A DNA stretch of 63,099 bases, filler included, from Sluysia triapertura (Eukaryota), in the NCBI GenBank assembly GCA_046118255.1. It is 5 parts of 5 records of this genome, joined end to end, with 100 filler letters (N's around TTAATTAATTAA, not from the genome) between each part and the next. Parts side by side here need not be neighbours in the genome. Positions count along the whole stretch, not along the records: positions 38,578 to 50,111 come from JBJNIA010183624.1; 4 more parts are not named here. One strand, written 5' to 3'. The position numbers and the translations under genes are program-made. How positions within the stretch are numbered: the first letter of the stretch is position 1; every line of letters starts with the position of its first letter. The notes under the pieces are model-generated. The model had not been told where the DNA came from. It was given only the letters and a program-made list of their open reading frames with translations, and made no database searches. Of the stretch, positions 1 through 50,111 are shown piece after piece.

Positions 1-3000
1 TTGATATATGAATTGATGAGATGTTATAAATGTCGAGTGTTGTTTATGATGATTGAGTTGGTGTAGTTCGATAGTATGAAGTGTGATTGCTTAAGAAATT
101 ATGTTTTAATGAAATTTAAATTATGGATATTGATTGTTATGTTTTGATAAATTTTAAGTTGTGAGAGTTGACCACTACAAACAAAGAAAGTTAGAAATTG
201 TTAAATGAAATTAATAAAGCATTATTAAAATTTTTAAATGACTATGAAGTGGACACCTTTTATTTGCAATGAATAAACTAATGTATGAAGTTCCTAACAG
301 CACATATTCAGTAACTCAACCAATTATTGATGCACTATCGAATGGTTTAGATTTTTCCCCAGAAGTATTTGCCGAATGTTACTTTTATTTGTTGCCATAT
401 ACTGATAAAATATGTGAAAGGTTATATGATGTGAGACTTCCAAAATTCTAATACCCATTACATCTCAACCGTTCATGTCAAGTCATGTATTTCTAAATTT
501 AATATTGATATAAAATGTAAACGTGATTCGGATATACTAAAATTGCCTCATGTAATAGGTATGATTTCCACCGAAAAAACATTTTTATCAAAAGGTAAAG
601 TAGGCTCGAAACAACAAAAAGAATTATTGATTAGTAGAAAAAGAAATAAGGTAATAATTGAGGACCGCATAACAGACGAAGACGAATCTGAATTTAAAAT
701 TAGGCATTCCAAAAATTGATTTGAAAGCAAGTAATCCATACTTATATTAGATGAAAATAAAAATAAAGGCGACTTTGAGGATAAAGAAGATCGAAACGAA
801 ATGAAATTTAAATTAAATTAAGAAAATTATGCATAAAAAATCTGTTAATTTCAAAGAAAGTAATCAAGATGACGGACAGAGGTGAATAATGTGAAAAATC
901 CGAAATTGTCGTTAAGTGAATTTAAACCGGAATTTGAAATACCAAACACTCCTCTCCTCCGCTTAGATACAGTTAAGAACTCTATGGTACGCGACAAAGA
1001 ACTTCAAACTGATGATAAGTTTACCATTTTTACGTTATTAAATAAAGTAATTTCATAGATAGCACACAACAGTATTATGCAATCAACGAATATGTTCTGT
1101 CCAAGAAATATACTACAAACCATTAAAATATGAGCAATGCTTTATTTCATTTTATCTTTCAGAAAATTTTTCTTCATTGTATTTGCCTGTACCTGTTTAT
1201 TATAATTATTTATTTAGGGTAGTTATCCCACAAAAAATTAATTTTATGTTTAGTCGTAATTCTGTGTTGAATAAAATCTTAAGGAATAAACAATTTTGAG
1301 TCTAATTCGTAATAATAATATGATTTTTCTTATGATAATTAAGACTTCAGTTAATGTGTTATCAAAATATAAATTGAACTTAATTTTGTTGATAAATTTA
1401 AGAAATAATAATAATTTATTAAACTACCACGATCATTTTCATAAACTCTTTATAATCTCCAACTGTCTTGAACCTAAATGTTTCACATGAAAGTATACGA
1501 ATTAATAAATCAATCTTTTCTTAGACTGATAATTCAAACTTCAACATAATATATTTGAAACCTTCATTAGTCTCTTAAAACAGCATTTAATTCCTATTCT
1601 TAATATACATAAATGGTATAAGACCATAATAATACCACACTATATAAAAAGGAGGATATAACATTAACTTACGATTATATATTTGTTTACATGCAAATGT
1701 TTTCATACAACATCTAAATATAAACGGCCTCCAACAACTACATCTAAAAATAAGTAGTTACAACACCACAGTAATCGCACTTAATTTCGCAATAACATCC
1801 AATCTGAATGTTCCAAAATTTTGAATCGAATATTGTCATAGCGAAGTGTTTCCAGATTTCCAAATTATCCCAAATATTGGTAGTGAAATATCCAAATTGG
1901 TGTGAATCGTCTTTTCCTAAAGTATCTAAAATTTCTCAACGCTATAATAAAAATTCAAGTCATTAGTTTTGATATTTTAAGCACTATTTATAGTGCTTTT
2001 CATTAATAAATATGATTATTCAATTTCCATGGTATAATACTTTTGATTAACTTATTTGCATATCATAATTCTATTACCTAACCAATTTAGTTCTATAATA
2101 ATTTACATGCATTCAACGGTTGTATAGCCAGTTTTTTCTATATAATAATCATAAATCATAATATTGTTTTGCCCATGCATTTTTTCATTTACTAGTTAAT
2201 TATAATTTGTACTAATTTTAGCCATGTGATTTTATTCAATTACATCCTATCCCGCCTGTGGTTGTTAGAATTTATTTTTCAGGTATTTTTAATATTTTAT
2301 TAACGCTTATGTTTAATTCGTTGATGCTTTTTATTTTGTTAAGTGCATCGGATTTCTGGTTTTTTTTGTTTGTTCAGATTTTCTTTGTTCGTTCTAAATC
2401 TTTGATTTTTATCTTGTTTAAAGTTTTTCGAAGTGTATTTGGTGCCTATGAAAATACTTTTTTGAAATTTTTAAAAGTTTTTTGAAGGTACTCTATAATT
2501 TTTCAATAATTTTTTATTTATTTTAATAAAATGCAATACATTTTATAATTCAAAATTATATATTTTTATACTTAAAAATCATTTATACTTCAACAATTTT
2601 GATACTTAAATTGTGATTTATAATGAGTCGTACAAGTAGATAAAGATAAATTTTAAAAACTATAGCTATTTGTGAATATTGTAAAATAATAAATCAGTTA
2701 CAATTTAATATTTTAAGAATTTTGAGTAATAAAGCATTAAGTTTTACAAAAACAAAAATTTTATAACAGATGTTATAAAAAACTATTCGTATAAAACAAT
2801 CTACTTCGTATAGTGTAGTAGATTATCTTTATTTTTATTTAAAACAAGTTTCTTTTTATATCATACATTTTATGACGAATAATTTAGCTAAGCGATATTA
2901 TAGTGCATATTAATCCTACATAAATCCTACATAATTGTTGAACTTACAACATAATTATGAAACAATAAAATGGTAAAGGAAATGACAATAAAAGTGTCGT

Positions 3001-6000
3001 GGGTTTTATATGTTTTATGTAATTATTATTTGAAAAAATTATATTGAACAAATCATTAATTTTATTTCTTTCTCTTTACATTTAATAATTAATTTAATTT
3101 TAACCAATTTAGTTTCGTCTTAAGGCCATGTATACAACAAAATATCAAAATCTCGAACCATTCAATTAATTGAACAAAATAAAACTGAAATTTTATATTA
3201 AACAATAAACAGAACGATGAGAACAATTGAATAATATAAAATTCTGTACTCACAATAAACAACACCTTTTGAACTGTCCAAACTGTATTGGAAATCATTA
3301 ATTCAGTATGGGTACCCGTTGGTGGTGATTGACGCGAATCATGTTTTACACTGTAATCTTAATGGCTGGAGTTATTTTCTTTAACTGAATATTCTATACT
3401 CTTGATTGCGGTCTGTGATCTGTGAAATACCACTAAATGATTAAACCTTTTCGAGCATTACAATTGTGATTGCAGTCAAGAAAACCACATAGATTATATG
3501 TAGTACGCAAACATAAAACACCTAAAGATTTAAGATTACTATATAAAATTATTATTAATACAAATACAACTCCATGGTCTTCGACATAAAAAATTCTAAT
3601 GAACGACTGTAAAGAGTATTATGCAAGTGAAACATAAAACTTAAAATTATAAAAAAAACCATCAAAAGGGCAAAACAAATATTCGTTGACTTTATAAGTC
3701 CATATGTTATATTGTATATACAATCACTCTACGCCAATCGAAGGTAAATCAGTTGTAAAAAATAGTAAAGCGATTCTTATTTACAATGATGTAAAAATAT
3801 ATAATAATGAATAAACAAATACGTAAATTTATAAATACACTAAATTTTCCAGTCGTATTTGGTTTAAATGAAATTGTAAAAAAATTATAAAAACTAATCG
3901 AGTAAATACAAGTATTAATAGCATGCTACTAGTTACGAAAGAATCATAGTAATATATCATATTGGAATCTCTAAATTTAAGCACATATTTTGACACCGTT
4001 CTATATCATGAATTATCTCTATTTGAATCCAATTTATAATCCCGATTCATTTTTAATATTTTCAATTGTCAAGCGATATATACCAACGCTAGGTATATAT
4101 TGATTTATTATTTTTAAAAAAATTCAATAATTATAATATTTAATAATTTAATATTTAATATACAAATCTCTCTGTTTCAGAAATATTATAATGCATGATT
4201 AGTGTTAAATACCTACTTAAATAGATAATGCGCTTTCTATTTCAAAAATATTATACCCATAAAACAATAATTTAATGAAATAAGTATAAGTGATAGAAGT
4301 GGAAAGCGCATATGTACATATGTACATAGAGACATTCATACATACATAAAGAAAACAATAATAATATACAAAATTTAAACAATTATGATATTATTAGGAC
4401 TGCGCTTTTGTTTTGTATGCATTGTGTAATGGTTTGATGTGTTGTAGTTAACTGAATAACTTGTTTAAGTAAGATGTGTTTATTTGTGTTGGTGTTTACT
4501 TGTAATTATTATAAGTTGATCTGGAGTTCACTACATGCAGAAACAACAGTATAACAACGACAATACTAACAAAAATTTTAGTGATGAAACATTAAGTGAA
4601 TGTAACAAATTGTGACTGAAATATACCATCTTGAAATATATGATCTTATAAAAATTGAGTTTGTGTTTTATGTATATTGTTTGGCGATTTGATGTTTTGT
4701 GTTGAAGAAATGCGTTAGTTTGTGTTGATGTTTACTTACAATTGTGTTTATGATTAGAGTGTTTTGATTTTGAATTCACTATATGGGTCAAATTGTCTAA
4801 GATCTGGGGGGTTATTAGGAAGACGAAATAGTGTACATTACCTCATCTTCAATATACAAAAGAAAGCAATAAAGCTCGATGGAAAAATTCAACAATCGGT
4901 CGAATATAAGTTGATATATTAGGTAGGCGCATTTGAATATTATAACTATGTTGCTACTCAAGCTGACGAGAAACATATTAAATCCATAAAAGTAGATGCT
5001 GGAAAGGATCATGAATATTTAATTTTTTTCAATGCGGAAATTACGGAATTTCTAAATTTCAATTGAAAATTTAGTTAAGAAGTCAATTGAAAAGTTAAAT
5101 AATTTTATTATTATATATTAAATATTATAAATTTAATTTATAGTTATTTAAATGATTAAATTTACAATAAGAAATTATTAAATTAATTTTCAAAATATTG
5201 AATAAGTTTTAAATATTAAATTTTTAATTTAAAACTGTAAATTCTAAAATATATCAGGTTTTCAATATAAACAGTTAGTTTTTAATGTTAAGTATGATTC
5301 TTTGTAATTATTACAAAGTTTATTTATCTCTATAAAATCCTTTTTTATAGATACGATTTTTTATTTTTTTCAGTACCTTTTTTATAGTAGATGTATCTGT
5401 AAGAATTTATATATTATTATTTACTAGTCTACCTATGTACGTATGCATTTATTTATTAGAAATTCATCACTTTTGAATAATTATTTGATTAGGAATCTTT
5501 TTATTAGATATTAGTTTTATATTTTTCTTATGTTTGTAGAGATTGCTTCAAATATGTGTTGAGAGTTGAACTTGAACTTAATTTTGAAAATCGAAATAAC
5601 TTTGATTAAATTAGTTTGCATATTTATTAGCTTGGATAGCTGTGATATAAAGATTCCATTCATTAAAAATAAGATATTTTCATACGATAAAAAGTTTACA
5701 TTTTTATGTGTATTATTTCCTTAACTGATTTAATCAATATTATTATTAGTAGTAGTAAAAAATAATTAAAATTTGTGTTATCTATCGTAATGTCAAGTGC
5801 AAGATCCCCTTTTGGGAATTCATTAATAAAGGCTTTAAATACTTAACTAATGGAGTTCAAATTTATCGAGAATGTAAAAATAAATGAGACTATTTGTGCT
5901 CATTAATTCAAAATCTATTAATTCACAGCTTACGTTAAAAGAAGATCATTCTGAAGAATCTTTCAAAAGCAGAAAATATTTATTTCAAACTTTTCATCAT

Positions 6001-38577: not shown

Positions 38578-39162
38578 TTATCTAAACATAAAAAGTATTT
38601 AGTTACCGATATTCATAAACAAGTCAAAATTCATTTGGATGCTTTAGAAGAAGCATATTTTAATCAATATTAATATCATTAAATGGTTGATTTTGCACAA
38701 GCAATTGAAAATGAAACGAACTCGAAATTCAGAATCGAAATAATTTTATGAATTAAGCCAAAACTATCAAATTTTTATGACTATCAATAAGTTATTCAAT
38801 TCGTTAGAAAATCTTCAAAATATTAGTCACATTTATGATATAAGAATTAAGAAATTGAAGAATTAGTTAAATAAAATCATTTGTTTTAAATTAATTTATT
38901 CAATAGTTTATTTTTATCTAATAAAAATTTATTTTTAGTACTATTTTAATATTATTGTTAGAATCTTGTTTTATTATTTTTATCAGATATTTATTATTAT
39001 GATTATTATTATTATTAATGATTATTATTATTATTATTGCAGTTATTATTGTTAGTACTATATAGTACTATTTTTAGAAAATTGAAGTTAGTTCACAAAA
39101 TATTCAGTTAAAAAAATTATTCAAAGTGTATTTTTAGTGACAAATTTTTCAAAAACTGTCCA

Positions 39163-39348
39163 GCCAAAGATTTAGTTAGAATTAGGAATTATGTCAAGAT
39201 GTCTATTTTGATGAAAGCAGATATTCAGGGTGTTTCTTTAGAAATACAGATGACAGATACAAACGACGACGTATTTGGAGAAGGAGGTGACGAAGAAGAA
39301 TCTGAAAAATTGATAAATCAGATTTTAGATGAATCGGGTGTTGAAATG
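39163..39348 (+). pseudogene. CHMP2A: CHMP2A/Vps2 (ESCRT-III) fragment with an internal ~50-aa deletion
   Basis: AKDLVRIRNYVKMSILMKADIQGVSLEIQ versus AKDLVRTRRYVRKFVLMRANIQAVSLKIQ, joined at CAG|ATG (39249/39250) to MTDTNDDVFGEGGDEEESEKLINQILDESG versus MNDAIDDAMGDEEDEEESDAVVSQVLDELG. Confidence 0.88.
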
Positions 39349-40539
39349 AATTCTGATTCAACAAAATCAGGATCAATGGAACCCACAGATGTAGAATGTG
39401 GTCTTACTTTAGATCACTGTTATGTTTTAAATTATGTATCAGATAAATGTGGATTTACTTTAGATCACTGTTATGCTTTGAATTATGTATCAGATAAAGA
39501 TGTTCTAGGTGATCTAAGAATTAAATTAGAACATTTGTACTTTGAATTTGAAAGCCAATATGAAAGTGGCCAAATTCATGGTACTGGTGATTGTTTACAT
39601 CACTTTAAAACGTCGTTTTTAGAATCATTATTATTATTAAATTCAAATGATCGTTCAGAATTGTTACATAATTTTATTAACGATAAACGAAATTTAAATC
39701 GGTTAAGCTTGCCCGATGTCGTAAGGATTCTACATTTAGAATTCCATGTTTTAAATTTTCATAGTTTACAAATGCTAGAATTATTGCCAATACAAATAAA
39801 CAGTGATTTGTTAATTAACTTAGTACAAGAAACTAGGATAGAATGTTTTATATTAACTAATGATGTCTTGACTTATTATTTCGATTTTAATAATGTATCG
39901 GTACATTTGTACCCTCATTCTGTTAAATTTTATAAAGTTTATTTTTATATTCATTTTTATTTTTACGAAAATAATAAACAATATTTTAAAATCGATTATG
40001 ATAGTTTTATTCAGTTAGAATTGTTTCACAATATTATGATACGCAGTGTTGAAATTTTAAAAGTTTTCGAAGGTTTAAATTTAAATTTAGTATTGTACGA
40101 GTTTTTGATACAAATTCAGAATTTTCTCCCAGATCATGATCGGGTTCTTGAAGCTTTACTAGAAATTCAGAAACCTATGGCTAGTTTAGAACGTCAGTCA
40201 TTAACCCCTCATTTGACAGCTGATTACATAAATACTTGCAATTCAATTTATCTATCGTTTAATATTGTTTCTTATAGTGAAATGTATGGGCTTTGGAACC
40301 CTAAATTTTTACAATTTTATAAATCTTTGTGTAATTCAAATCTTAATTTTAATTTTTCATATAAATATAATAACGTTATTGGTTATTTTCTTCGGATGTT
40401 TTTTAATAATACGAGATTAATAAATTTTAATGATTTGAAAGTAATAAATATTAATTATAGATTTTATTTTGAATTTACATTTAACTTTAATTATAATCAA
40501 TACCGGCCATTCTTACAGGCAGCACGCCTGAAATTCTAA
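39199..40539 (+). CDS. Intronless 446-aa chimeric ORF: CHMP2A-derived N-terminus plus unrecognised F/L/Y/N-rich body
   Basis: Longest ORF in the window; the frame is open from 39112, which is unlikely by chance at this AT content. AATAAA at 40682. Expression unknown. Confidence 0.6.
   Translation: MSILMKADIQGVSLEIQMTDTNDDVFGEGGDEEESEKLINQILDESGVEMNSDSTKSGSMEPTDVECGLTLDHCYVLNYVSDKCGFTLDHCYALNYVSDKDVLGDLRIKLEHLYFEFESQYESGQIHGTGDCLHHFKTSFLESLLLLNSNDRSELLHNFINDKRNLNRLSLPDVVRILHLEFHVLNFHSLQMLELLPIQINSDLLINLVQETRIECFILTNDVLTYYFDFNNVSVHLYPHSVKFYKVYFYIHFYFYENNKQYFKIDYDSFIQLELFHNIMIRSVEILKVFEGLNLNLVLYEFLIQIQNFLPDHDRVLEALLEIQKPMASLERQSLTPHLTADYINTCNSIYLSFNIVSYSEMYGLWNPKFLQFYKSLCNSNLNFNFSYKYNNVIGYFLRMFFNNTRLINFNDLKVININYRFYFEFTFNFNYNQYRPFLQAARLKF
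39397..39498 (+). repeat. In-frame 51-bp tandem duplication (CGxTLDHCYxLNYVSDK x2)
   Basis: Units 39397-39447 and 39448-39498 differ at only a few positions. Confidence 0.95.
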
Positions 40540-41754
40540 TTTATTATGTAGATGCTTATATTTTAAAATGTTTAAGTAGAATTCTTTGTAAAACTTTTTA
40601 ATTCTACAGTTTTGTGATAAATTTAGTCAAAGAATGTATATAAGTAAGAATGTATAATGTATGCATTGTGTTAAGATAAAGAATAAATTTTATGTATACA
40701 TTTTAATTATATTTTAAGTTTTTGTTTTAATATTGCACATTTTATGAATATTTCGAAAATTTTGAAAATAATGGAAAAATGCTGCCAGTCAATGAAATTA
40801 ACTTAGAAAATTCTGAAACAAAATCTGTGCAGTATGTTATAGTTTATCTTTATAAAGTTTTGATAGAATTACAGAAGAAGATAGTAAATTTTACTTGAAT
40901 ACGTCGAAATCAGCTGATTTTCTTCGAATCATGTCGCCGATTTATGGAATAGATTTCTATTTTGCAAACGTTCAATTTTCATCAATGTTATTCATTTTGT
41001 TGCATGATCTCCACAATTTTTATTTTCATGAAACTTTTACTAAGTGTATGTTTAATTTACGAATTATAATAGTTGCAAAATATTTTACTTTCACTTTTAT
41101 TTATCCATTTTATCATCAGAATTTTGCTCTTGTTATCTGATGGTTCAATATCAAGTTGTGCATTGTCTACTTAATTTAGTTGTGACATTAAAACTCAATT
41201 TTGAGTTACATTGATGTCAGTTTTTTTTGTTCTAAACTATTTAAATTTCCAAGTTATTTCAAAATGATCATAAATTTTAAAACGATTTTGAATATTACAG
41301 ATCAAACAATAGAGATAAAATGAATAAAGATTAAATTATGAAAATATGGAAAGTTTATGAATTTAACATTATTTTGTCGAAGTTTTTTTCGATATTTTAG
41401 GTTTTATATTTTTATTGCTGACAAAAGTGGATTAGTTTTGATTCAATCTTTGAGTAGTTTTAACTTTTATCTCTTTGTTTTATTATATATTACAAATATC
41501 CATGTCGGAATAACTATAGGACGATTCTTTTGTTTTTTTGGAAGTGCTGGTGTTTTTCTAGTATGGAGGTTTTATAGTTGTGGTGATTCAACCCTTCATC
41601 TATGATTGTATTATACCGTATACATAAATAAAACTTCATTAAAACATACTCTACTACTGCATCAATATCCATATCTATATTACCAAGCTTTAACTTACAA
41701 AATAGTAAATTTATAAAATTTTAAACTATGACTTTTGTAAAATTTTAAAAATTG

Positions 41755-41755
<1 letters not shown>

Positions 41756-41796
<41 letters not shown>
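41756..41796. repeat. (AT)n microsatellite
   Basis: Direct. Confidence 0.97.
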
Positions 41797-41800
<4 letters not shown>

Positions 41801-42639
41801 TAGGCTTTCAGTCTTATATTAGTCTAGTTAATGATTATGTTTCAATTAATCTCACACCGATTTTACTTTAGTCTTTATCTTTTTCTAAAATTTATGCTTG
41901 GTATGGTCACCCTTATGAACCTTATTCGATGTATCTTATTTCTTATATTTCAATGCATTATTTTCTCTTCTCAAAATGAAAATGAGTTCGGTACTTTACT
42001 TTTCAACTAAACAATTAAAAGGAAAAGAAAAGTCTAACTTTTTAAAGTCTTTTATCTAGCAATTATGTAATATATAAAATACCTTATTAAGTGAATAAAT
42101 AAACACACTATAAGTTAGTTCTCTGTGTGAGAAGACAACAACTTGATCAATTGGTTAGAGTCTCAAATTGATTAGGAGTTTCACGCAGTCGTTCAGTTAA
42201 TAATAATTAAATGTCCTCTTGTTTCCTGGTTGATCACTGTTTCACACAGATCTGTCGAATATTATCAACAATAGACAGAGTTTTCTTTTCTATTTCTGAA
42301 GATAAACTATTTATACTACCTAAAAATTTTCTGCGTATGATTATCTTCTCGCAGTCTAATAAACTATTAGAACATAGACAGTATATAACACAAATATATA
42401 TGCAATTGTTTTCTCGCATTATAAAACTATTGAAATCTATTATTAATTTGAAAATATTAAATTATTATTTATAATTTTACAATACTGTTATAAATTATAT
42501 AAACACATTTATTTCGAACTGTTACAAATTCAGTTGTATTATTATTAATTCACTTCAGAGTATTTTTTTAGTTATTTACATTCATTTATTTATTCATTTC
42601 AGTCACATTTAGTTATTATAACTATTTTCCTTTAGCATA

Positions 42640-43270
42640 AACAATTTAATCCAGACATTCAGACATATAAAATTTATGTAACTGCACATTCACTAATATA
42701 ATTTATAATTTATTATTATTATACGTTTTATTAGCATACAATCACTTGAAATTAATAGACATTCGTTTATTTTGTAGAATTTTTGAAACTGCACATTTAC
42801 TAGCATGATTTATTATTTATTATTAATCATGATCATCACTTGTATCTTTCAATGTATTGACAATAATTTTGCGGCTCAAAATTACATTTTATGTATTGTT
42901 CATGGCTTAATTTGGTTTTAGAGTTATCAAGCATTCGATTTATTTGGATGTTATAGCAAGAATTATATTTTATTAATTATAATATTTCAATATTAAAGAG
43001 TATTATATCATGTTGCTATTATTACGTATTTATTCAAGCATTCGGTTTATAGCAAGCATTACATTTTATTAATCATTCGATACTAACATAACTTACAAGA
43101 GTATTAAATTATCAAGAGTTTATTTTTAAATCATTCATTATTCGATTAGAATTTCAACTACTTTCAAACAACTATAAACAAAATAACAAAACATTGCATT
43201 TTTAATTTATTTTTAAAAATTAAAGAGTATTGTATATTAACAATGATTATTATGTTGCTTCAATACTTTC
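42640..43270. repeat. Degenerate tandem array, ~107-bp period
   Basis: CTGCACATT at 42682/42789 and CAAGCATTCG at 42928/43035 (both 107 bp apart); recurring AAGAGTATT. Confidence 0.7.
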
Positions 43271-43990
43271 ATTTATTACCACTATTAAATTTTAACTTTT
43301 GTAAAACATAATTCACGATTGTCGTCATTATTGTAATGACCAGTAGTATAAATAGTTGAATGAAATTTTTTATAAAATTTTTTTTATTAAATTTTTTTAC
43401 TGGAGAATCGGACAATATCACAATTTTTAGCAAATTCATTTATCAATTTTTATGTCAATAGTTTGGTGATGTTTTTGCCGAAATATAATTAATTCTTGTT
43501 TTTGCTAGTACTAAAAATTACGCTCATATAGAATCAATTTTGACTAGTGTTTTTAACATGACAAATTTAACAATTACTTTTAGTACATTTGAAAAACGTT
43601 AGGAATATTATACTATTACCTTAATTATGATAGTTTCCGTCATTGCTGCGGGTTTAATTATAAGAATTGTGATTGTCTGCAGTAAGATTCGGAAAAACGA
43701 TAGGAAAATATTCTCGGATGAATACTTTTCGCGGATATCCTTTTTCGAATTTAACTTTTGAAAAGACAGTCTTAAAAGCGTATAACATATGTCTTATTTT
43801 TTTATTTTATGAATTAATAATTAATGTAATATATTTAAAACTAATTATTTCGATATTTAGAGTTTAATTTTAATATAAAATCTGATTTTATTAAAGTTAT
43901 TTTTATGTAACGAGTTTTGTTTTAATATCAAAAGGTTTTTATTGTATGTTCAGAAGAAAGAATTGTTAAGCATAACCAATTGTAATTTAT

Positions 43991-44039
<49 letters not shown>
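43991..44039. repeat. Compound (AC)10(AT)n microsatellite
   Basis: Direct. Confidence 0.97.
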
Positions 44040-44042
<3 letters not shown>

Positions 44043-46199
44043 AAATTATATATAATTATGAATGAATGCATGTATTGGTAGTGATTCACCTCATAAGTCA
44101 AAGTTTTGTATTACGTTATCCATCCATATAAAAGAGAAATTAACCACTTAAACAATTTTTACACATTAGTTAAACAATCAATCAAAATACATTAAATGCA
44201 ACACTTTAAGTTCTATATATCATAACAATTTCTTGAATATCATACTTCCTACAAAAACAATAACATCTCTCACTTTCACTTTTTCAATTTTTCTTCACCT
44301 ACACACAAAATTCCCTCATTTCAAACATTAGGGAATTCTTTATTCTTTTATTCTTATTTTTTCCTTTCCATTTTGTGTATGTACATAAAAGAAATTCTTC
44401 TGATAACGATTTGATGTTTACTAAATTATATTCAAGATATAAACCAGTAGTGGCTGAGTTTGACAGTAGAGAATTAAAAGATCTCGAATACTAGAACTAG
44501 AAAAACAAATTCACAAATGTAAAACCGACATTTACAACTAATCTTATTTTATTCAAGGTAGAGTGTTTCTATTTCCCACAAGCAATATAAACAAAATTAT
44601 TAATAGAGTAATACCACGGCTGTTGAATATATCATTAAGTCTTGACATTCTAAAAGAATTTAGTCTTCAATGAGATCATTTAGAAAGAATTGTTAAAACA
44701 TGTTTAAACTATTTTAAGTTCAAGGCAGATCGTACCGTTAAAATCACAAGAATTTAAATTGTAAATGAAACAGCAGCACCATCAACAAATCCTCATAATG
44801 AACATTCAGAAATTTAAGAATAAGAAAAACAAATAACAAAAGCTTAAAAGAAATCCTAACATCAATGTTGCATTAAAAGTGATGAAATCACAATTAGTAA
44901 AGAAACCATGCTTAATTTTTGCAGTTATTTTCTCTAGGAAAGAAAGACTTAAATGAAAGAATTTGAACACATGGCAATGAAAGCACATATTCTTTTTAGG
45001 AAATATTTAATGCCTCGATCCGCTAGTATCTTCGTAAATGTAGGTGACGAGTCATGATACTAATAATTAATCTATAAAATTGTTTTATGAACTTTCTGGC
45101 AATTTAAGGAAAATAAATTTATCTTTTAAATTGTTTAACTCTGATATCCGGATTTATAATGGACTTTTCTTTTAATGCGTAACGTATTAATGATTAAGCG
45201 GAACTTTTAAATGAGCCTCAATACTTTTATAAATGAAGACAAAAATCTAGTGTTTAATAAATATATCCATATGGGATTATGTTTTTATTTATATATGTGC
45301 ATATATTTTTAATAAATTATCAAAAAATCATAACAATTTATAATAATTATAAAACTTATCAAAAAATAATTCTTTTAATCGATATTTTGTACAGTTTAAC
45401 AATTGCAAGATGGCTTTATTTTAACATCGCTTAATTGTTCAGATGACTTATGTTAACGACTGTATAATTATTAATGACGCTTACTGTGAACAAATAAATA
45501 TCATCAATAAAACAATTAAAAACGATTATGATTATATGAATAGATTTCGAGTTGATTTAAATCTTAATTTTGATGATAATGCAGAAACACATTATAGTCA
45601 TAATAAAGTAAATGACTTAAATCCACCTTATGAAATTATTCTCGTTAAGTGGTAATAATGAAGGTGATGATTTAATAATAAGTCCTGATTCACAAATGTT
45701 TCTGATGTTTCGATCAGTTTTTTGTCCTAGAAAATACTATATTCACCACTGTTTCAAACCTACTATTTTCAGTTTTATAGCGTTATACAATCTGAGAGAA
45801 TCTAACCGTACTTTTCAAGTAGCATGATTATCCTCTGTTAATCACTATTTCTATGTTTGTATCAAGTTACAAGATTACAAAAACTACTTAGTCATTCTAC
45901 ATAGATTCAACTTACTTCGTCTACACATTGTAAATCCTTTTCTCAATTTCTATGGAAACCTTGATTGTCACGTGAGTTTTATGTGTTTTTTTTCATTTAT
46001 ACAATTTTCATATTTAAGCATTTTTATGTATATAATAAATTAGAGAAATTTTATTTTATTTAGAAATTAACTTTAATTGATGTGTTAAGGTCCTTAAGAC
46101 CAATAGATACATTATTACACAATTTTTCACATATTTAACTTTAAAAAAGATAGTGTATTTCGTTTTTTACTTTATAAAAAAGTTCAACTTCCAATAAAG

Positions 46200-46700
46200 A
46201 TAATTTTACGATATTTCCCCTATACATTAAAAACATCTAAAACTTTGCGCCGATCGTTTGTTTCATTTTTTATGCAAAACCGCTTACATAAATCTTTTAA
46301 TCTGCTATTTATCCTATTTAAGTCATTTTCACTTATTATTTGTTCCAATATATAAATATTAACTTTTCAAATTTAAACTTACATCATAAATATTTTACTC
46401 AACTCATAAACTGCCTATAACATCTACATTGACGACTAACTGTAATTTATTTTTTCTCATTCCCTGACATCTTTTGTTGACAGATTTCTAATCACTTTCT
46501 GCACACAATCAACAAAAAGACCCAATTTCATCTCCCCAAAATTTTTGCTACCTTTCTACCATCCATATTAGGTAAAATTAATACTAATTCTCTTATCAAA
46601 AACTTAAAACTACAAATTTTATTATCATCATCAAACGTTTTTAATTTACAAAATTTATATTACATCCAATTCACAAAAGAAATTATGTAAAATTATTATG
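46200..46700 (+). mobile_element. Degraded LINE reverse-transcriptase relic
   Basis: YNIYIDD*...SFVD resembles LFNIYIDDL...LFADD; weak YRPIS-like and YLG-like remnants in the expected order. Confidence 0.4.
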
Positions 46701-47989
46701 GATGCAAATATTACATGAAAAATTTAATTTAAGAATTATAAACTGTAACAGAATGAAGTGTATATTATCAGTAATATATAGAATGAAGTGAAAGTCTTTA
46801 TTATTAATAGATATCAAAAATTTAATGTTATGACGTTATTTATTTGACTGTATATAAAGTAAAGATTAGCAAGAATAATAATCACATGATATTTGTGGAA
46901 CAAATTGATCAGATAGTTAAATTGTGGATGGATTCTTAATAAAACTCAAGACAAAATTTATTCGTGGGATTTAATTTGCGAATACAATCATAAGAAACAA
47001 AGATATTTGCGAAATTTGATTTAGAGGCACATTCATCAGATTAAATTCATTAAGTTTAGAGCAATTTTAACTTATTTATTTAGAGTGAGTGCTAAATGTT
47101 TTAATTATTTTTTATTTATTATTTTCTATTTATTTCGTCTGAATGATAAATCTCATCAATGTTAAATTAATTTGTTAATTAATAAGGAGTTAGAGAGCTA
47201 AGTATAGGTTGAAATCAAACTTTTACGATTTAGTCAATCTATGTTATAGTTTATGTTAATATTACTTGGCGATACGAGACGGTGCTTATTGAAAAGTATT
47301 TTGATTGGAAATCCATGTAATATTTTATTGATAATTGAGTATTTGCTTAGCGGTATTTGAGAACAAGTTTATATTACGTTCGTTTAGACTTGAGTGATGA
47401 AAATACAATCAATTAGCATAAGTTCTTACCTTTTTCTTCAGGTTCTGACGACTCAGACAAGAGTAATTTCTGGCCGAATAAAAAAGTGTGACAATGCATG
47501 AGTATTGCATGATTAGCGTCGCTCGTTTCAATGATGACATTGTGTCCAAAACTTGACAGAATATTCATTATGACGGAGTCTTTATTAGAAGCTGTAACGA
47601 TTGTGATATTGTCTTGTTTATTAATCGTCTTATATAAATTAGAACTCGAAGAAAAATGTAGTTTTGTTTATATGTGTTCTTGTATTCAGATGAACGTTTG
47701 GTTATGTGTCCATTATCAATTATCAGTACATCTTTAATTATATATTTGTATTCGCAAATCAACTTATCATTATCATAATTAAATACAATTTTATTCCTAA
47801 CTAAATTATCTAAATTGAACATATCTTTATTTATGTAATTGGCATCAGTAATGGATGCATCTTTATTTACTAAATTATTATTAATAATAAACTCGTCTTT
47901 AACTTCATAGTTATCAAAAACAATGTATCTTTATGTTCATAATCATTATCTAAGTAGAAGGTACTTATCTAACTAGATAAACTTCCTTT

Positions 47990-48320
47990 ATCTAAATTAG
48001 CTACAGACGATGCGAAAGCAATGATAAGAGGAAAAATGGATTTATAGCTAAATTATTAGCTAAACAACACGGTATTTCTCACGATAACCACTTTCACCCT
48101 GTTCATTGCATCATACATGAGGAGATACTGTGTTCCAAATTAAGAAAAATGGAAAACGTTCTTCAATTTGTCAAATAAACTGTAAATTTTATACGATCTC
48201 GAGGTTTGAATCAACGACAATTTTTATCATTAGTGTCAGAAATTGAAAATAAACATGATGGTTTAATTATGCAGAAGTGCATTGGCTTTCTTGTCACAAA
48301 TTTTTTGTTTCGGTTCTGGG
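47990..48320 (+). mobile_element. Degenerate hAT transposase (SPIN/Buster, GTF2IRD2-like) fragment
   Basis: ATDDAKAM.../HCIIHEEILCSK..MENV..*TVNFIRSRGLNQRQF.../AEVHWLS matches TTDGAPAM, HCIIHQEALC, VNFIRSRGLNHRQF and EVRWLS. Confidence 0.92.
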
Positions 48321-48731
48321 TGTAGGAAATTCATCACATAAAATTCATCACATTTCATCACATAAAAACACTTCACATGTACACAGACTATTAAACAAAC
48401 TACTAAACTCATTCAAAAACAAACATGACCATCACATCTAATTATCATGAACTATCGCTATTATTATTACAATTCAGATCGTATTAAAATATATATAATA
48501 ATTATAGTCATTATTGTCATATAATATGATCATATAGTAATAACTTTTATAATAAATTTCATAATAAATTTCAACATCAACAATTCTGTATTAATAAACA
48601 TAATATTCACATAATTGTGATCATTATTATTATTTCCTTATCCTTATTAATTTTTTCGTTTATTTTTATTATCAATCTCTCTTTCTATTTTTTTTGTCGT
48701 TTTTCTTCAATACTCTTTTTAATACAATATA

Positions 48732-49010
48732 TCTGATCCTGATATATCTTACTGCGATACTGGAACTAATATTAATCAAACTGTGGGACAGAAAAGAAAA
48801 CTGGATAAATCTATGTAGAGTAATGAATTTATTAAATCAAAAATTCGAAAATCGGATGCACCAGTCGCCGAACAAAAACCTAAAGAATCCTCAACGACAG
48901 TTCAATCAAAAGAAATTTTGCGATTGAAACATACGTATGGAATGAATGCTTGGAGACATTGGTCTAATGGTATAAAAGATCTATTGAAATTGTCACCTGA
49001 ATCAGTCTAG
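48732..49010 (+). pseudogene. ZMYM2/3/4 (Woc)-like fragment with an in-frame stop
   Basis: LRLKHTYGMNAWRHW..IKDLLKLSPE resembles ZMYM/Woc LKYTYGVNAWKHW...KEDLLSHTTAEL; TAG at 48816-48818 and at 49008-49010. Confidence 0.7.
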
Positions 49011-49011
49011 T

Positions 49012-49583
49012 CCTTGTTCAGATAGACATACGACAATCAATCCAGTGTCGACGGGCTTGCGTAACCAAGCCTACGTGTTTCATTCAAACACACCCAAGAG
49101 CGCAATATTTATGAATAATACATTAGCAGATCAACAAGATTACAATCAAAATCAATATCCTAGCAACAGTAATCTTTTTTATTACAATACAAATTCAAAA
49201 AAAGTCCAACAAAAAAAACAATTAGTATCATCACATATTAACTCAGAATTTCCAAATCATCATTATCAACAATCTGGTCAAACTTTAGATAGTTTCCATA
49301 TTAACACTAATAATAATCCTAATAATAACGTAGTCAATCAAGTATTACGAGGTAACAAAAATTACCAAGAAACGGACCAATCAAACAACAGACAATATAA
49401 ACAAAATCGTGACAATAACCAATGACAGTGGTTTACAAACAAATACTATAAATAGCAGCAATTTAAATAATCATGATGATTCTAATAAAAGTATTGGATT
49501 GGGTAGTAAAGGAGGCAGTTGTTTTAATAATGATTGTTGTGCCACCTTGTTTAGATGTAGCCAATTAAAAAGACTTGAGTAAT
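49012..49583 (+). pseudogene. N/Q-rich coding fragment with one frameshift, unidentified parent
   Basis: The 126-aa ORF continues in another frame (NDSGLQTNT...GGSCFNNDCCATLFRCSQLKRLE*); no clear splice acceptor. Confidence 0.45.
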
Positions 49584-50111
49584 AATAATAGTCCAAATTA
49601 AAAGAAAAATTAGTTCATACTTATTGATTTCTTTTCGAATAAAAAACACGAAACGAAAAATGAAACGTATAATATTATCAATCTACAACCAATTTTCTAA
49701 ATCCGATTATCTACTTAAAATAGTAAGTAAACAATAATCAGTAGTATTTAATTTTTATTTAAAAATTCTTGATCTGCATTAAGTTGCTTTGTTGCTACTG
49801 ACCCGATGTCTTTCATTATTTATACGTCAGTTTGCTTTTTGGGGGATTTCTTTAAATTAATTAATTAATAATAATAATTTTCATAGAATATTTGAATTAA
49901 AGACGATGTAAAATAAATTATGCTTAAAAATTTAATAAAAAAATTTTAAAAAATCAATATTTTTGTATTTTGTTTCGTTACATTTATGTTGACTCTACGC
50001 AATTAAATTTTTTGGTACTGTTGATTATAAATAGTGGCAACGATAGAAGAACGAATTGATACTGCATCAAATATAAGAAATGAACGTTTAGAATCACAAG
50101 CAAAAAGATCG

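What the first reader, a model, noticed from the sequence alone, without database searches (positions are those of the whole stretch)
39112..40539. Intact chimeric ORF: internally deleted ESCRT-III (CHMP2A) piece fused to an orphan ~400-aa protein
Seen: a frame open for about 1.43 kb (39112-40539) among heavily decayed neighbours. It starts with two non-adjacent CHMP2A segments joined in frame at CAG|ATG, lacking about 50 aa of the core, then runs into an unrecognised sequence. Known: CHMP2A is an ESCRT-III membrane-scission subunit used in virus budding. Inference: this is an exon-skipped retrocopy captured by a mobile element or a young chimeric retrogene. It is the best candidate for something undescribed here, but no function is shown.
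Basis: partly seen in the sequence, partly recalled or inferred. Interest (0 to 1): 0.78.

Follow-up and report, generated by a model that had tools for sequence, protein, structure and literature searches.

The report
Multi-copy chimeric CHMP2–F-box-LRR reading frame
The long open reading frame is real and is a patchwork of two scraps of an ESCRT-III (CHMP2) gene and the leucine-rich-repeat part of an F-box protein that has lost its F-box. It is one copy of a repeat present tens to hundreds of times in this very AT-rich animal genome, so it looks like an amplified chimeric retrocopy or gene-capture family, with no function shown.

Summary
Frame +1 is open for 475 codons (39112-40536, stop 40537-40539; first ATG 39199, 446 aa) in roughly 24% GC DNA. 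The other five frames carry 34-63 stops, and shuffles never exceed 136 codons.

Residues encoded at 39160-39249 match human CHMP2A 55-85 (E 2.9e-6). From exactly 39250 the frame matches the acidic CHMP2 segment, so about 50 core residues are missing.

The body is not a complete orphan. ORF aa 103-227 (39505-39879) are 41% identical to an invertebrate F-box/LRR protein, P0001, whose model resembles FBXL3. The ORF has no F-box. Its last 219 aa match nothing.

The decisive new fact is copy number. In a DNA run with near-identical single-copy flanks (contig depth about 8-19), 1053 contigs at 80-100% identity pile onto the ORF. Summed depth is 450-1000 over the CHMP2 part and 2000-4300 over the 3' half.

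Twenty-four differences from the majority of copies split 7 synonymous to 17 non-synonymous, against 6.7 synonymous expected if neutral.

Best reading: a dispersed, 3'-biased repeat family, probably retroposed, carrying a chimeric host-derived ORF. This copy is one of the full-length, still-open members. I could not test expression, exon-skipping or function.

The parts
39112..40539 (+). Open frame of 475 codons plus a TAA stop. The first ATG is at 39199, giving the 446-aa ORF 39199-40539.
   Evidence: Frame +1 has only its terminal stop against 34-63 stops in the other frames, and shuffles never exceed 136 codons.
39160..39249 (+). CHMP2 segment 1 (AKDLVRIRNYVKMSILMKADIQGVSLEIQ). It is equivalent to human CHMP2A residues 55-85, the distal half of helix alpha2.
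   Evidence: 7zcg_B, E 2.9e-6.
39250..39378 (+). CHMP2 segment 2 (MTDTNDDVFGEGGDEEESEKLINQILDESGVEM...), the acidic region matching Snf7 profile positions 127-157. It begins directly after segment 1, so about 50 aa of the core are absent.
   Evidence: Snf7, E 0.0018, below the gathering score. (P0002, 56% identity, alignment starts at 39250).
39395..39498 (+). In-frame tandem duplication of a 51-bp (17-codon) unit: 2.0 copies, 92% alike. The two sites where the second unit differs (39453, 39454) are private to this copy or its subfamily.
   Evidence: variants at 39453/39454 in 23-25 contigs.
39505..39879 (+). Stretch homologous to the first leucine-rich repeats of an F-box/LRR protein family (ORF aa 103-227, matching P0001 aa 127-262).
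   Evidence: 41% identity, E 3e-23 pairwise. The global-alignment z-score is 18.5 against shuffles. The P0001 model resembles FBXL3.
39880..40536 (+). C-terminal 219 codons, F/N/L/Y-rich and at background GC (0.24), with no detectable homology. It is stop-free although about 18 stops are expected. This is the most highly repeated part of the family.
40540..40602 (+). Short 3' flank still shared by most copies. Summed depth falls from about 950 at 40555 to about 108 at 40603, so the common 3' end of the high-copy unit lies here.
   Evidence: table 3 (40555 C>T in 21 contigs, depth 917 of 952; at 40603 total depth is 108).
40756..41026 (.). A second, moderately repeated stretch (summed depth 250-700, copies about 90% alike, many joints). 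It may be a separate small repeat or the tail of longer family members. Single-copy depth resumes from about 41067.
   Evidence: tables 2, 5 and 8 (records 4-7).

Best explanation
Window 39112-40539 is a full-length, still-open member of a lineage-restricted dispersed repeat family. The family's unit carries a chimeric host-derived coding sequence with three parts.
(i) Two non-contiguous scraps of a CHMP2-type ESCRT-III gene: part of helix alpha2, and the acidic alpha4-alpha5 region.
(ii) A short linker with a 17-codon tandem duplication.
(iii) The leucine-rich-repeat body of an F-box/LRR (FBXL-like) protein, with the F-box and the roughly 70 residues after it replaced.

Most likely (inferred), an intronless chimeric transcript was copied back into the genome many times by a retrotransposon's machinery. 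That would leave mostly 5'-truncated and internally deleted copies with a common 3' end just past the stop codon.

The frame was kept open by selection somewhere in the lineage of the source copy. This particular copy differs from the family majority in a neutral pattern. Its intactness is best explained by youth plus an intact source, not by a demonstrated function.

If translated, the product could neither polymerise as an ESCRT-III subunit (core missing) nor dock onto Skp1 (no F-box). At most it would be an LRR binder or decoy.
For: Shown:
- ORF reality and statistics.
- CHMP2 segment 1.
- CHMP2 segment 2, with the junction at 39250.
- FBXL-type homology of aa 103-227. P0001 carries an F-box, has F-box relatives in Schistosoma and other invertebrates, and folds like FBXL3, SKP2 and TIR1.
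- No F-box in the ORF.
- No further CHMP2 or F-box exons anywhere in the 11.5-kb piece.

Multi-copy status:
- The flanking contigs are near-identical to the window: records 3, 7 and 8 have 0-1 mismatches and depths of 8-14.
- 1053 contigs lie on the stretch: 115 at 99% identity or more, 155 at 95-99%, 330 at 90-95% and 453 below 90%.
- Summed depth along the ORF is 453 (39102-39232), 1033, 2386, 762 and 268, then 2189-4310 (39757-40411), 1857, and 338 after the stop.
- That 3'-biased profile is what 5' truncation gives.
- Deletion variants 39520>39845 (with 3 letters between, net 321 nt, depth 385) and 39497>39765 (267 nt, depth 115) account for the dip.
- At least 6 contigs with a variant at 39362 reach 40 nt or more to each side, so the CHMP2-to-body join is shared among copies.

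Neutral pattern:
- 24 listed differences from the majority split 7 synonymous to 17 non-synonymous, against 6.7 synonymous expected for those mutation classes.
- Only 6.3% of single substitutions would create a stop, so a copy a few per cent diverged can stay open by chance.

The ORF is uninterrupted for 1.4 kb, as expected of a cDNA-derived copy.
Against: - No poly(A) tail, clear polyadenylation signal or convincing target-site duplication is visible at the inferred ends. The only candidate, CAAAATATT at 39096 and 41076, is one of about 10 such 9-mer matches expected by chance in this AT-rich DNA.
- The tool itself warns that summed depth is not a copy number, and low-complexity AT-rich stretches attract spurious contigs at 80% likeness.
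- The run used may be the very sample the window was assembled from, so it is not independent proof of the assembly.
- No contig was shown to bridge 39249|39250 by 31 nt or more.
- Both well-supported internal deletions are in frame. That could hint at selection for coding capacity in subfamilies, but the chance of both being in frame is about 1 in 9.
- The whole 475-codon frame, including a 219-codon tail of background composition, is stop-free. So a protein-level function in at least the source lineage is implied and remains unexplained.
- No individual copies could be retrieved, so there is no true dN/dS, phylogeny or insertion-site analysis.
Confidence: 0.55

Rival explanations
1. This is a functional, amplified host gene family (ampliconic or rapidly expanding). 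Its members encode an F-box-less LRR protein with an ESCRT-III-derived N-terminal tag. It could act as a decoy or adaptor, for example sequestering the substrates of the parental FBXL protein or binding ESCRT-III through the acidic alpha5-like helix. It might be involved in genetic conflict or defence.
For: - The frame is stop-free over 475 codons where about 40 stops are expected, including the 219-codon tail of background composition.
- The body has diverged far from its nearest F-box relative (41% identity at best) without losing the frame. That requires long-term selection for an open frame in some lineage.
- The two best-supported deletion variants are both in frame.
- Copies exist in a second organism, X2.
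- F-box and LRR families are known, from general knowledge, to expand explosively in some animals.
Against: - The synonymous to non-synonymous split of this copy against the family majority is neutral.
- The most abundant variants delete precisely the only conserved LRR stretch, and most copies appear to be 3' fragments.
- One-base indels occur in other copies (table 4).
- No RNA holder was found.
- No related protein longer than a fragment exists among 1.84 billion representatives except P0001.
- The AlphaFold model of the ORF is unstructured in confidence terms (pLDDT 37).
Confidence: 0.2
2. This is gene-fragment capture by a DNA transposon (Helitron-, Pack-MULE- or CACTA-like). Pieces of a CHMP2 gene and of an FBXL gene were picked up at the DNA level, stitched together and amplified with the element.
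For: - The stretch combines fragments of two unrelated host genes with abrupt joins, and is high-copy with internal-deletion derivatives.
- A small GC-rich hairpin-like motif lies about 10 nt before CTAA-T at the ORF end (40520-40541). I read this directly from the sequence, and it superficially resembles a Helitron 3' end.
Against: - No terminal inverted repeats or target-site duplications flank the unit.
- Most copies continue past 40541, to at least about 40555-40590, so the Helitron-like motif is not the family's end.
- Fragments captured at the DNA level usually carry introns and rarely give one clean 475-codon frame.
- The strong 3' bias of depth fits retroposition better.
Confidence: 0.15
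3. This is a single-copy young chimeric retrogene, or a CHMP2 retrocopy that merely landed beside an unrelated transposon ORF.
For: The joins are in frame and the ORF is intronless. The precedent is retroCHMP3.
Against: Depth over both CHMP2 segments is 30-70 times the flank depth, and the CHMP2-to-body join is shared by several diverged contigs. The body is host-gene-derived (FBXL LRR), not a known transposon protein.
Confidence: 0.04
4. This is an assembly artefact. The chimera would have been created by collapsing or mis-joining repeats.
For: The region is repetitive, and short-read contigs fragment there. Only 53% of sampled words are held by the best run, and no listed contig spans the whole stretch.
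Against: A mis-join would not be expected to give a perfect 475-codon frame across three joins. Contigs from other copies cover the 39322-39402 join. Unique contigs match both flanks with 0-1 mismatches (records 3, 7, 8).
Confidence: 0.04

Closest known systems
retroCHMP3 (truncated CHMP3 retrocopies of New World monkeys and mice; Rheinemann et al., bioRxiv 10.1101/2020.08.30.273656 and 10.1101/2021.04.27.441704)
   Same: It is a partial copy of an ESCRT-III subunit gene sitting outside the parental locus, intronless, with an open frame.
   Different: - According to its abstract, retroCHMP3 is a duplicated, truncated CHMP3 that blocks virus budding. From my own knowledge, it keeps the polymerising N-terminal core and loses the C-terminal autoinhibitory and MIM region.
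- The present ORF is the opposite. It lacks alpha1, half of alpha2, alpha3-alpha4 and the MIM, keeping only about 30 and about 40 residues.
- It is fused to an LRR body.
- It is present in many copies.
- No antiviral or any other activity has been shown for it.
F-box/LRR (FBXL) substrate receptors of SCF ubiquitin ligases (e.g. FBXL3, SKP2), represented here by P0001 and the Schistosoma 'F-box domain' proteins
   Same: ORF aa 103-227 are 41% identical to P0001 aa 127-262, the start of its LRR solenoid. The remaining length is similar: 219 aa in the ORF against 214 aa in P0001.
   Different: There is no F-box. The C-terminal half is not detectably homologous, although that part is also unalignable between true family members, so the test has little power. 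The sequence is multi-copy.
Processed-retrocopy families, chimeric retrogenes and gene-fragment-carrying repeats (LINE-mobilised cDNA copies, Pack-MULE or Helitron captures). This comparison rests on general knowledge.
   Same: Host coding fragments from unrelated genes are joined and multiplied. The copies are 3'-biased, with truncation and deletion derivatives, and they diverge neutrally.
   Different: The hallmarks that would assign the mechanism (poly(A) tail, target-site duplications, terminal repeats) were not found in this copy. A 475-codon frame kept open through very AT-rich sequence is unusual for dead copies.

Membership tests
ESCRT-III / Snf7 (CHMP2) | A complete Snf7 domain that reaches Pfam's gathering score. 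| tested here: not met
   PF03357 scores 18.4 bits on the N-terminal 87 aa and 10.2 bits on the whole ORF, against a cut-off of 27.3.
ESCRT-III / Snf7 (CHMP2) | The alpha1-alpha2 hairpin and alpha3-alpha4 core needed for polymerisation. | tested here: not met
   Only CHMP2A 55-85 and the acidic stretch from about residue 136 onward are present. About 50 residues between them and everything N-terminal of residue 55 are absent. No other CHMP2-like exon exists in the piece.
ESCRT-III / Snf7 (CHMP2) | A C-terminal MIM that binds the VPS4 MIT domain. | tested here: not met
   CHMP2 similarity ends near 39378 (ORF aa 60), and the frame continues into unrelated sequence. No separate motif scan was run.
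F-box / LRR proteins (FBXL-like) | An F-box motif (Skp1 docking). | tested here: not met
   There is no PF00646 or PF12937 hit on the ORF. hhalign of ORF aa 1-102 against the family alignment finds nothing. P0001 has the F-box at aa 8-52.
F-box / LRR proteins (FBXL-like) | Homology of the LRR substrate-binding body. | tested here: met
   This holds for aa 103-227 only: phmmer E 1.1e-13, BLASTP E 3e-23 at 41% identity, z = 18.5. Aa 228-446 are not detectable.
retroCHMP3-like dominant-negative ESCRT-III retrocopy | Retains the N-terminal ESCRT-III core and lacks the C-terminal autoinhibitory region. | tested here: not met
   The core is missing and the acidic C-proximal piece is retained.
LINE-mobilised processed retrocopy family | Intronless copies of a spliced mRNA. 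| tested here: inconclusive
   The frame is continuous for 1.4 kb, and the CHMP2 pieces abut at CAG|ATG. The parental gene structures could not be obtained.
LINE-mobilised processed retrocopy family | A common 3' end with variable 5' truncation. | tested here: met
   The depth profile rises from 453 to 2000-4300 toward the 3' end and drops between 40556 and 40602. Depth is a rough proxy only.
LINE-mobilised processed retrocopy family | A poly(A) or simple-repeat tail and target-site duplications. | tested here: inconclusive
   No A-rich tail follows the stop. There is one 9-bp candidate duplication, at chance level.
DNA-transposon gene capture (Pack-MULE / Helitron) | Terminal inverted repeats plus target-site duplications, or 5'-TC...hairpin-CTRR-3' termini at the ends of the family. 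| tested here: not met
   No inverted repeats flank the unit. The CTAA motif at 40538-40541 is not the end of most copies.

The most novel reading that the evidence does not exclude
The family is not junk. It would be a selfishly or adaptively amplified gene family whose product, an F-box-less LRR receptor carrying the acidic autoinhibitory helix of CHMP2, acts as a decoy. Possible targets are the SCF substrates of the parental FBXL protein or the ESCRT-III machinery, for example in genome conflict or virus and transposon restriction. That would make it analogous in logic to retroCHMP3 or to amplified chimeric drive and suppressor genes. The long-maintained 475-codon frame and the in-frame deletion variants would then reflect selection.
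Probability: 0.1. Interest if true: 0.65.

Novelty: new member of a known kind. Interest (0 to 1): 0.35.

Why it matters
If the best reading is right, this is a tidy example of how very AT-rich invertebrate genomes create and multiply chimeric coding sequences from host genes. It is useful for repeat annotation and as a warning: gene predictors will call this ORF, and probably many sister copies, as 'CHMP2-like' or orphan genes.

It would matter more if full-length copies prove to be expressed and constrained. An F-box-less LRR protein tagged with an ESCRT-III fragment would be a new kind of decoy. The retroCHMP3 precedent shows that partial ESCRT-III copies can acquire defence functions. Nothing here shows that.

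Tried and rejected
1. The word-indexed protein search with the whole ORF found nothing. With the CHMP2 part only (143-aa query, region 1-87) it also found nothing, so the parental CHMP2 gene and the species could not be identified.
2. The exact-sequence look-up of the ORF found no record.
3. Pfam found nothing on the body.
4. The ESM Atlas feature search on the body gave only sub-threshold leads (0.83-0.84; F-box clusters at 0.77). These turned out to point the right way but are not evidence.
5. The AlphaFold model of the ORF with an 8-sequence alignment had pLDDT 37. It is unusable, so I ran no fold search on it.
6. The hhalign run is invalid, because the target alignment contained the query. 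I redid it without the query.
7. Homology of the C-terminal half was tested by hhalign and by shuffled global and local alignment. Neither was significant. The control between two true family members is equally insignificant, so this test has no power.
8. The metagenome scans (protein patterns, then an exact 24-mer) found no related loci.
9. Rfam and tRNA scans of the piece found nothing.
10. Pfam on ten other ORFs of the piece found nothing above noise.
11. The search for target-site duplications and inverted repeats at the inferred ends gave chance-level matches only.
12. The contig carrying P0002 could not be read because its file is too large. Intron positions in that CHMP2 relative could therefore not be checked.
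Full report
**1. The observation**

The piece (38578-50111) is about 24% GC throughout. Frame +1 from 39112 is open for 475 codons and ends at the TAA at 40537-40539. The first ATG is at 39199, giving a 446-aa ORF.
- Over this stretch, frame +1 has only its terminal stop, while the other five frames have 34-63 stops.
- When each third of the ORF is shuffled, 11-18 stops are expected, and none of 5000 shuffles is stop-free.
- The longest open frame in 200 shuffles of the whole piece is 136 codons.
- The next longest real ORF in the piece is 126 aa.
- GC at codon positions 1/2/3 is 0.36/0.23/0.20.

The frame is real, and chance does not explain it.

**2. The CHMP2 pieces**

The first 87 residues of the open frame hit human CHMP2A in the PDB (7zcg_B, E 2.9e-6). 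Query residues 17-46 (39160-39249) align with CHMP2A 55-85, ending at SLEIQ/SLKIQ.

The next residues match Pfam Snf7 profile positions 127-157. That match is weak (E 0.0018, 18.4 bits, below the 27.3-bit cut-off).

The exhaustive search of 1.84 billion representatives returned P0002, a 94-aa Snf7-family fragment that is 56% identical to ORF aa 15-57. In tblastn, P0002 aligns from its residue 25 starting exactly at 39250.

The ORF lacks alpha1, half of alpha2, alpha3-alpha4 and the C-terminal MIM. By the family's defining features it is not an ESCRT-III protein.

**3. The body**

Pfam finds nothing on the body, and the word-indexed search was blank.

The exhaustive search found one relative, P0001 (476 aa, E 1.1e-13). 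It comes from a 1465-nt contig of a public run that carries little beyond this one complete ORF.
- BLASTP gives 41% identity between ORF aa 103-227 and P0001 aa 127-262 (E 3e-23). The global-alignment z-score is 18.5 against shuffles.
- P0001 has an F-box at aa 8-52.
- Its relatives are 'F-box domain' proteins of Schistosoma species and F-box clusters of arthropods and molluscs (feature score 0.98).
- Its AlphaFold model (pLDDT 60, pTM 0.60, alternating strand and helix) is most like FBXL3 (4i6j_B, Foldseek E 1.2e-11). Next come D3/MAX2, COI1, FBXL2, SKP2 and TIR1.

So ORF aa 103-227 derive from the first leucine-rich repeats of an FBXL-type substrate receptor.

The ORF has no F-box. There is no Pfam hit, and hhalign of aa 1-102 against the family alignment finds nothing.

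The last 219 aa are F/N/L/Y-rich, at background GC, and have no detectable homology. That part is equally unalignable between two true family members, and it has nearly the same length as P0001's tail (219 against 214 aa). A very diverged LRR tail is therefore possible but not shown. The model of the ORF itself is unusable (pLDDT 37).

No other CHMP2-like or F-box-like exon lies anywhere in the 11.5-kb piece.

**4. Copy number, the decisive new fact**

Two DNA runs hold the stretch. Their organism names are coded, and no RNA run holds it. I laid their contigs on 38578-42500.

Run X1 has contigs that match the unique flanks with 0-1 mismatches (records 3, 7 and 8; depth 8-14). X1 is therefore the same or a nearly identical genome, possibly the source sample itself.

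On the ORF, 1053 contigs lie at 80-100% identity:

| Identity | Contigs |
|---|---|
| 99% or more | 115 |
| 95-99% | 155 |
| 90-95% | 330 |
| Below 90% | 453 |

Summed depth along the stretch is as follows:

| Window region | Summed depth |
|---|---|
| 39102-39232 | 453 |
| 39233-39363 | 1033 |
| 39364-39494 (tandem-duplicated bin) | 2386 |
| 39495-39625 | 762 |
| 39626-39756 | 268 |
| 39757-40411 | 2189-4310 |
| 40412-40542 | 1857 |
| 40543-40673 (after the stop) | 338 |
| 41067-42376 (unique flank, excluding the repeated 41591-41721 bin at 524) | 12-35 |

The tool warns that summed depth is not a copy number. Even so, the contrast of one to two orders of magnitude, together with the spread of identities, shows a repeat family.

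The dip at 39626-39756 is explained by two deletion variants:
- 39520>39845, with 3 letters between (net 321 nt), depth 385.
- 39497>39765 (267 nt), depth 115.

Both are in frame, and both remove the only FBXL-conserved stretch.

Contigs carrying a variant at 39362 extend 40 nt or more on both sides, so the CHMP2-to-body join is shared by other copies. Bridging of 39249|39250 by 31 nt or more was not shown.

Depth falls from about 950 at 40555 to about 108 at 40603, which places the common 3' end there. A second, moderately repeated block lies at about 40756-41026.

Run X2, a different organism, holds low-depth copies at 80-95% identity. One of its contigs (record 9, 81% identity, single-copy-like depth) loses similarity exactly at 39249 and continues for 121 unlike bases. 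That fits either that organism's true CHMP2 gene or a copy lacking segment 1.

**5. Constraint**

The 24 best-supported sites inside the ORF where most other copies differ from this one split 7 synonymous to 17 non-synonymous. The neutral expectation for those mutation classes is 6.7 synonymous.

Only 6.3% of possible single substitutions create a stop. A copy a few per cent away from an intact source can therefore remain open by chance.

The frame as a whole, however, cannot have drifted neutrally from an FBXL ancestor to 41% identity without acquiring stops. Some source lineage was under selection for an open frame.

**6. Explanation**

The best-supported reading is a dispersed repeat family carrying a chimeric, host-derived coding sequence: CHMP2 scraps, then a linker with a 17-codon duplication, then an F-box-less FBXL LRR body. 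The window holds one of the minority of full-length, still-open copies.

I infer retroposition of an intronless chimeric transcript from three things: the 3'-biased depth, the common 3' end and the uninterrupted frame. The usual hallmarks (poly(A) tail, target-site duplications) are not visible. The one 9-bp candidate duplication is at chance level.

The rivals are:
- A functional amplified gene family.
- DNA-transposon capture. No terminal repeats were found, and a Helitron-like CTAA motif at the stop is not the family's end.
- A single-copy retrogene, which the depth disfavours.
- Misassembly, which the clean frame and the shared join disfavour.

If made, the protein could neither polymerise as ESCRT-III nor bind Skp1. 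At most it would be an LRR binder or decoy.

**7. Comparison and novelty**

The nearest named precedent for a partial ESCRT-III copy is retroCHMP3. It has the opposite architecture, is not fused and is not multi-copy.

The general kind, chimeric retrocopies and gene-fragment-bearing repeats, is well known. This particular CHMP2 + FBXL-LRR combination found no counterpart among 1.84 billion protein representatives. A search for papers holding CHMP2, retrogene and chimeric together returned only the two retroCHMP3 papers.

I rate it a new member of a known kind, of moderate to low interest unless expression and constraint are shown.

**8. Limits**
- The species is unknown. My guess of an AT-rich invertebrate, possibly a flatworm, rests only on the taxa of P0001's relatives.
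- No individual sister copies, parental genes, RNA data or long reads were available.
- All conclusions about copy number rest on one contig-based run that may be the source sample.

Noticed in passing
window 38578-38670 (+): An open frame runs off the left edge of the piece and ends at a TAA (…KKYLVTDIHKQVKIHLDALEEAYFNQY*). The bin 38578-38708 has a summed contig depth of 157 against about 27 next to it, so this may be the tail of another repeated coding element.
   Followed up: no
window 41591-41721: A short stretch just before a (TA)20 microsatellite is repeated in the genome. Summed depth is 524, and 41 contigs carry G>A at 41687. The surrounding sequence is single-copy.
   Followed up: no
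window 40756-41026: A moderately repeated block lies downstream of the ORF, with many joints, back-steps and small insertions among copies (tables 5 and 5c). It could be a separate small element or the tail of longer family members.
   Followed up: partly
window 49045-49425 (+): A 126-aa Q/N-rich ORF with no Pfam match. It is the second longest ORF in the piece.
   Followed up: partly
window 42668-42825 and 42927-43112: Local direct duplications spaced about 107 bp apart (51-90 bp matches, 70-84% identity) appeared in a self-BLAST.
   Followed up: no
window 39249-39333 versus run X2 record 9: A low-depth contig of a second organism matches CHMP2 segment 2 at 81% identity. It loses similarity exactly at the 39249|39250 junction and continues for 121 unlike bases. 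It may be that organism's genuine CHMP2 gene.
   Followed up: no
L001 (Logan contig SRR21676451_103248), 21-1451: P0001, the only detectable relative of the ORF body, is a complete 476-aa F-box/LRR protein. It sits on a 1465-nt, roughly 43% GC (estimated by eye) contig that carries little beyond this one ORF, from an unidentified organism. No paper cites that run.
   Followed up: partly
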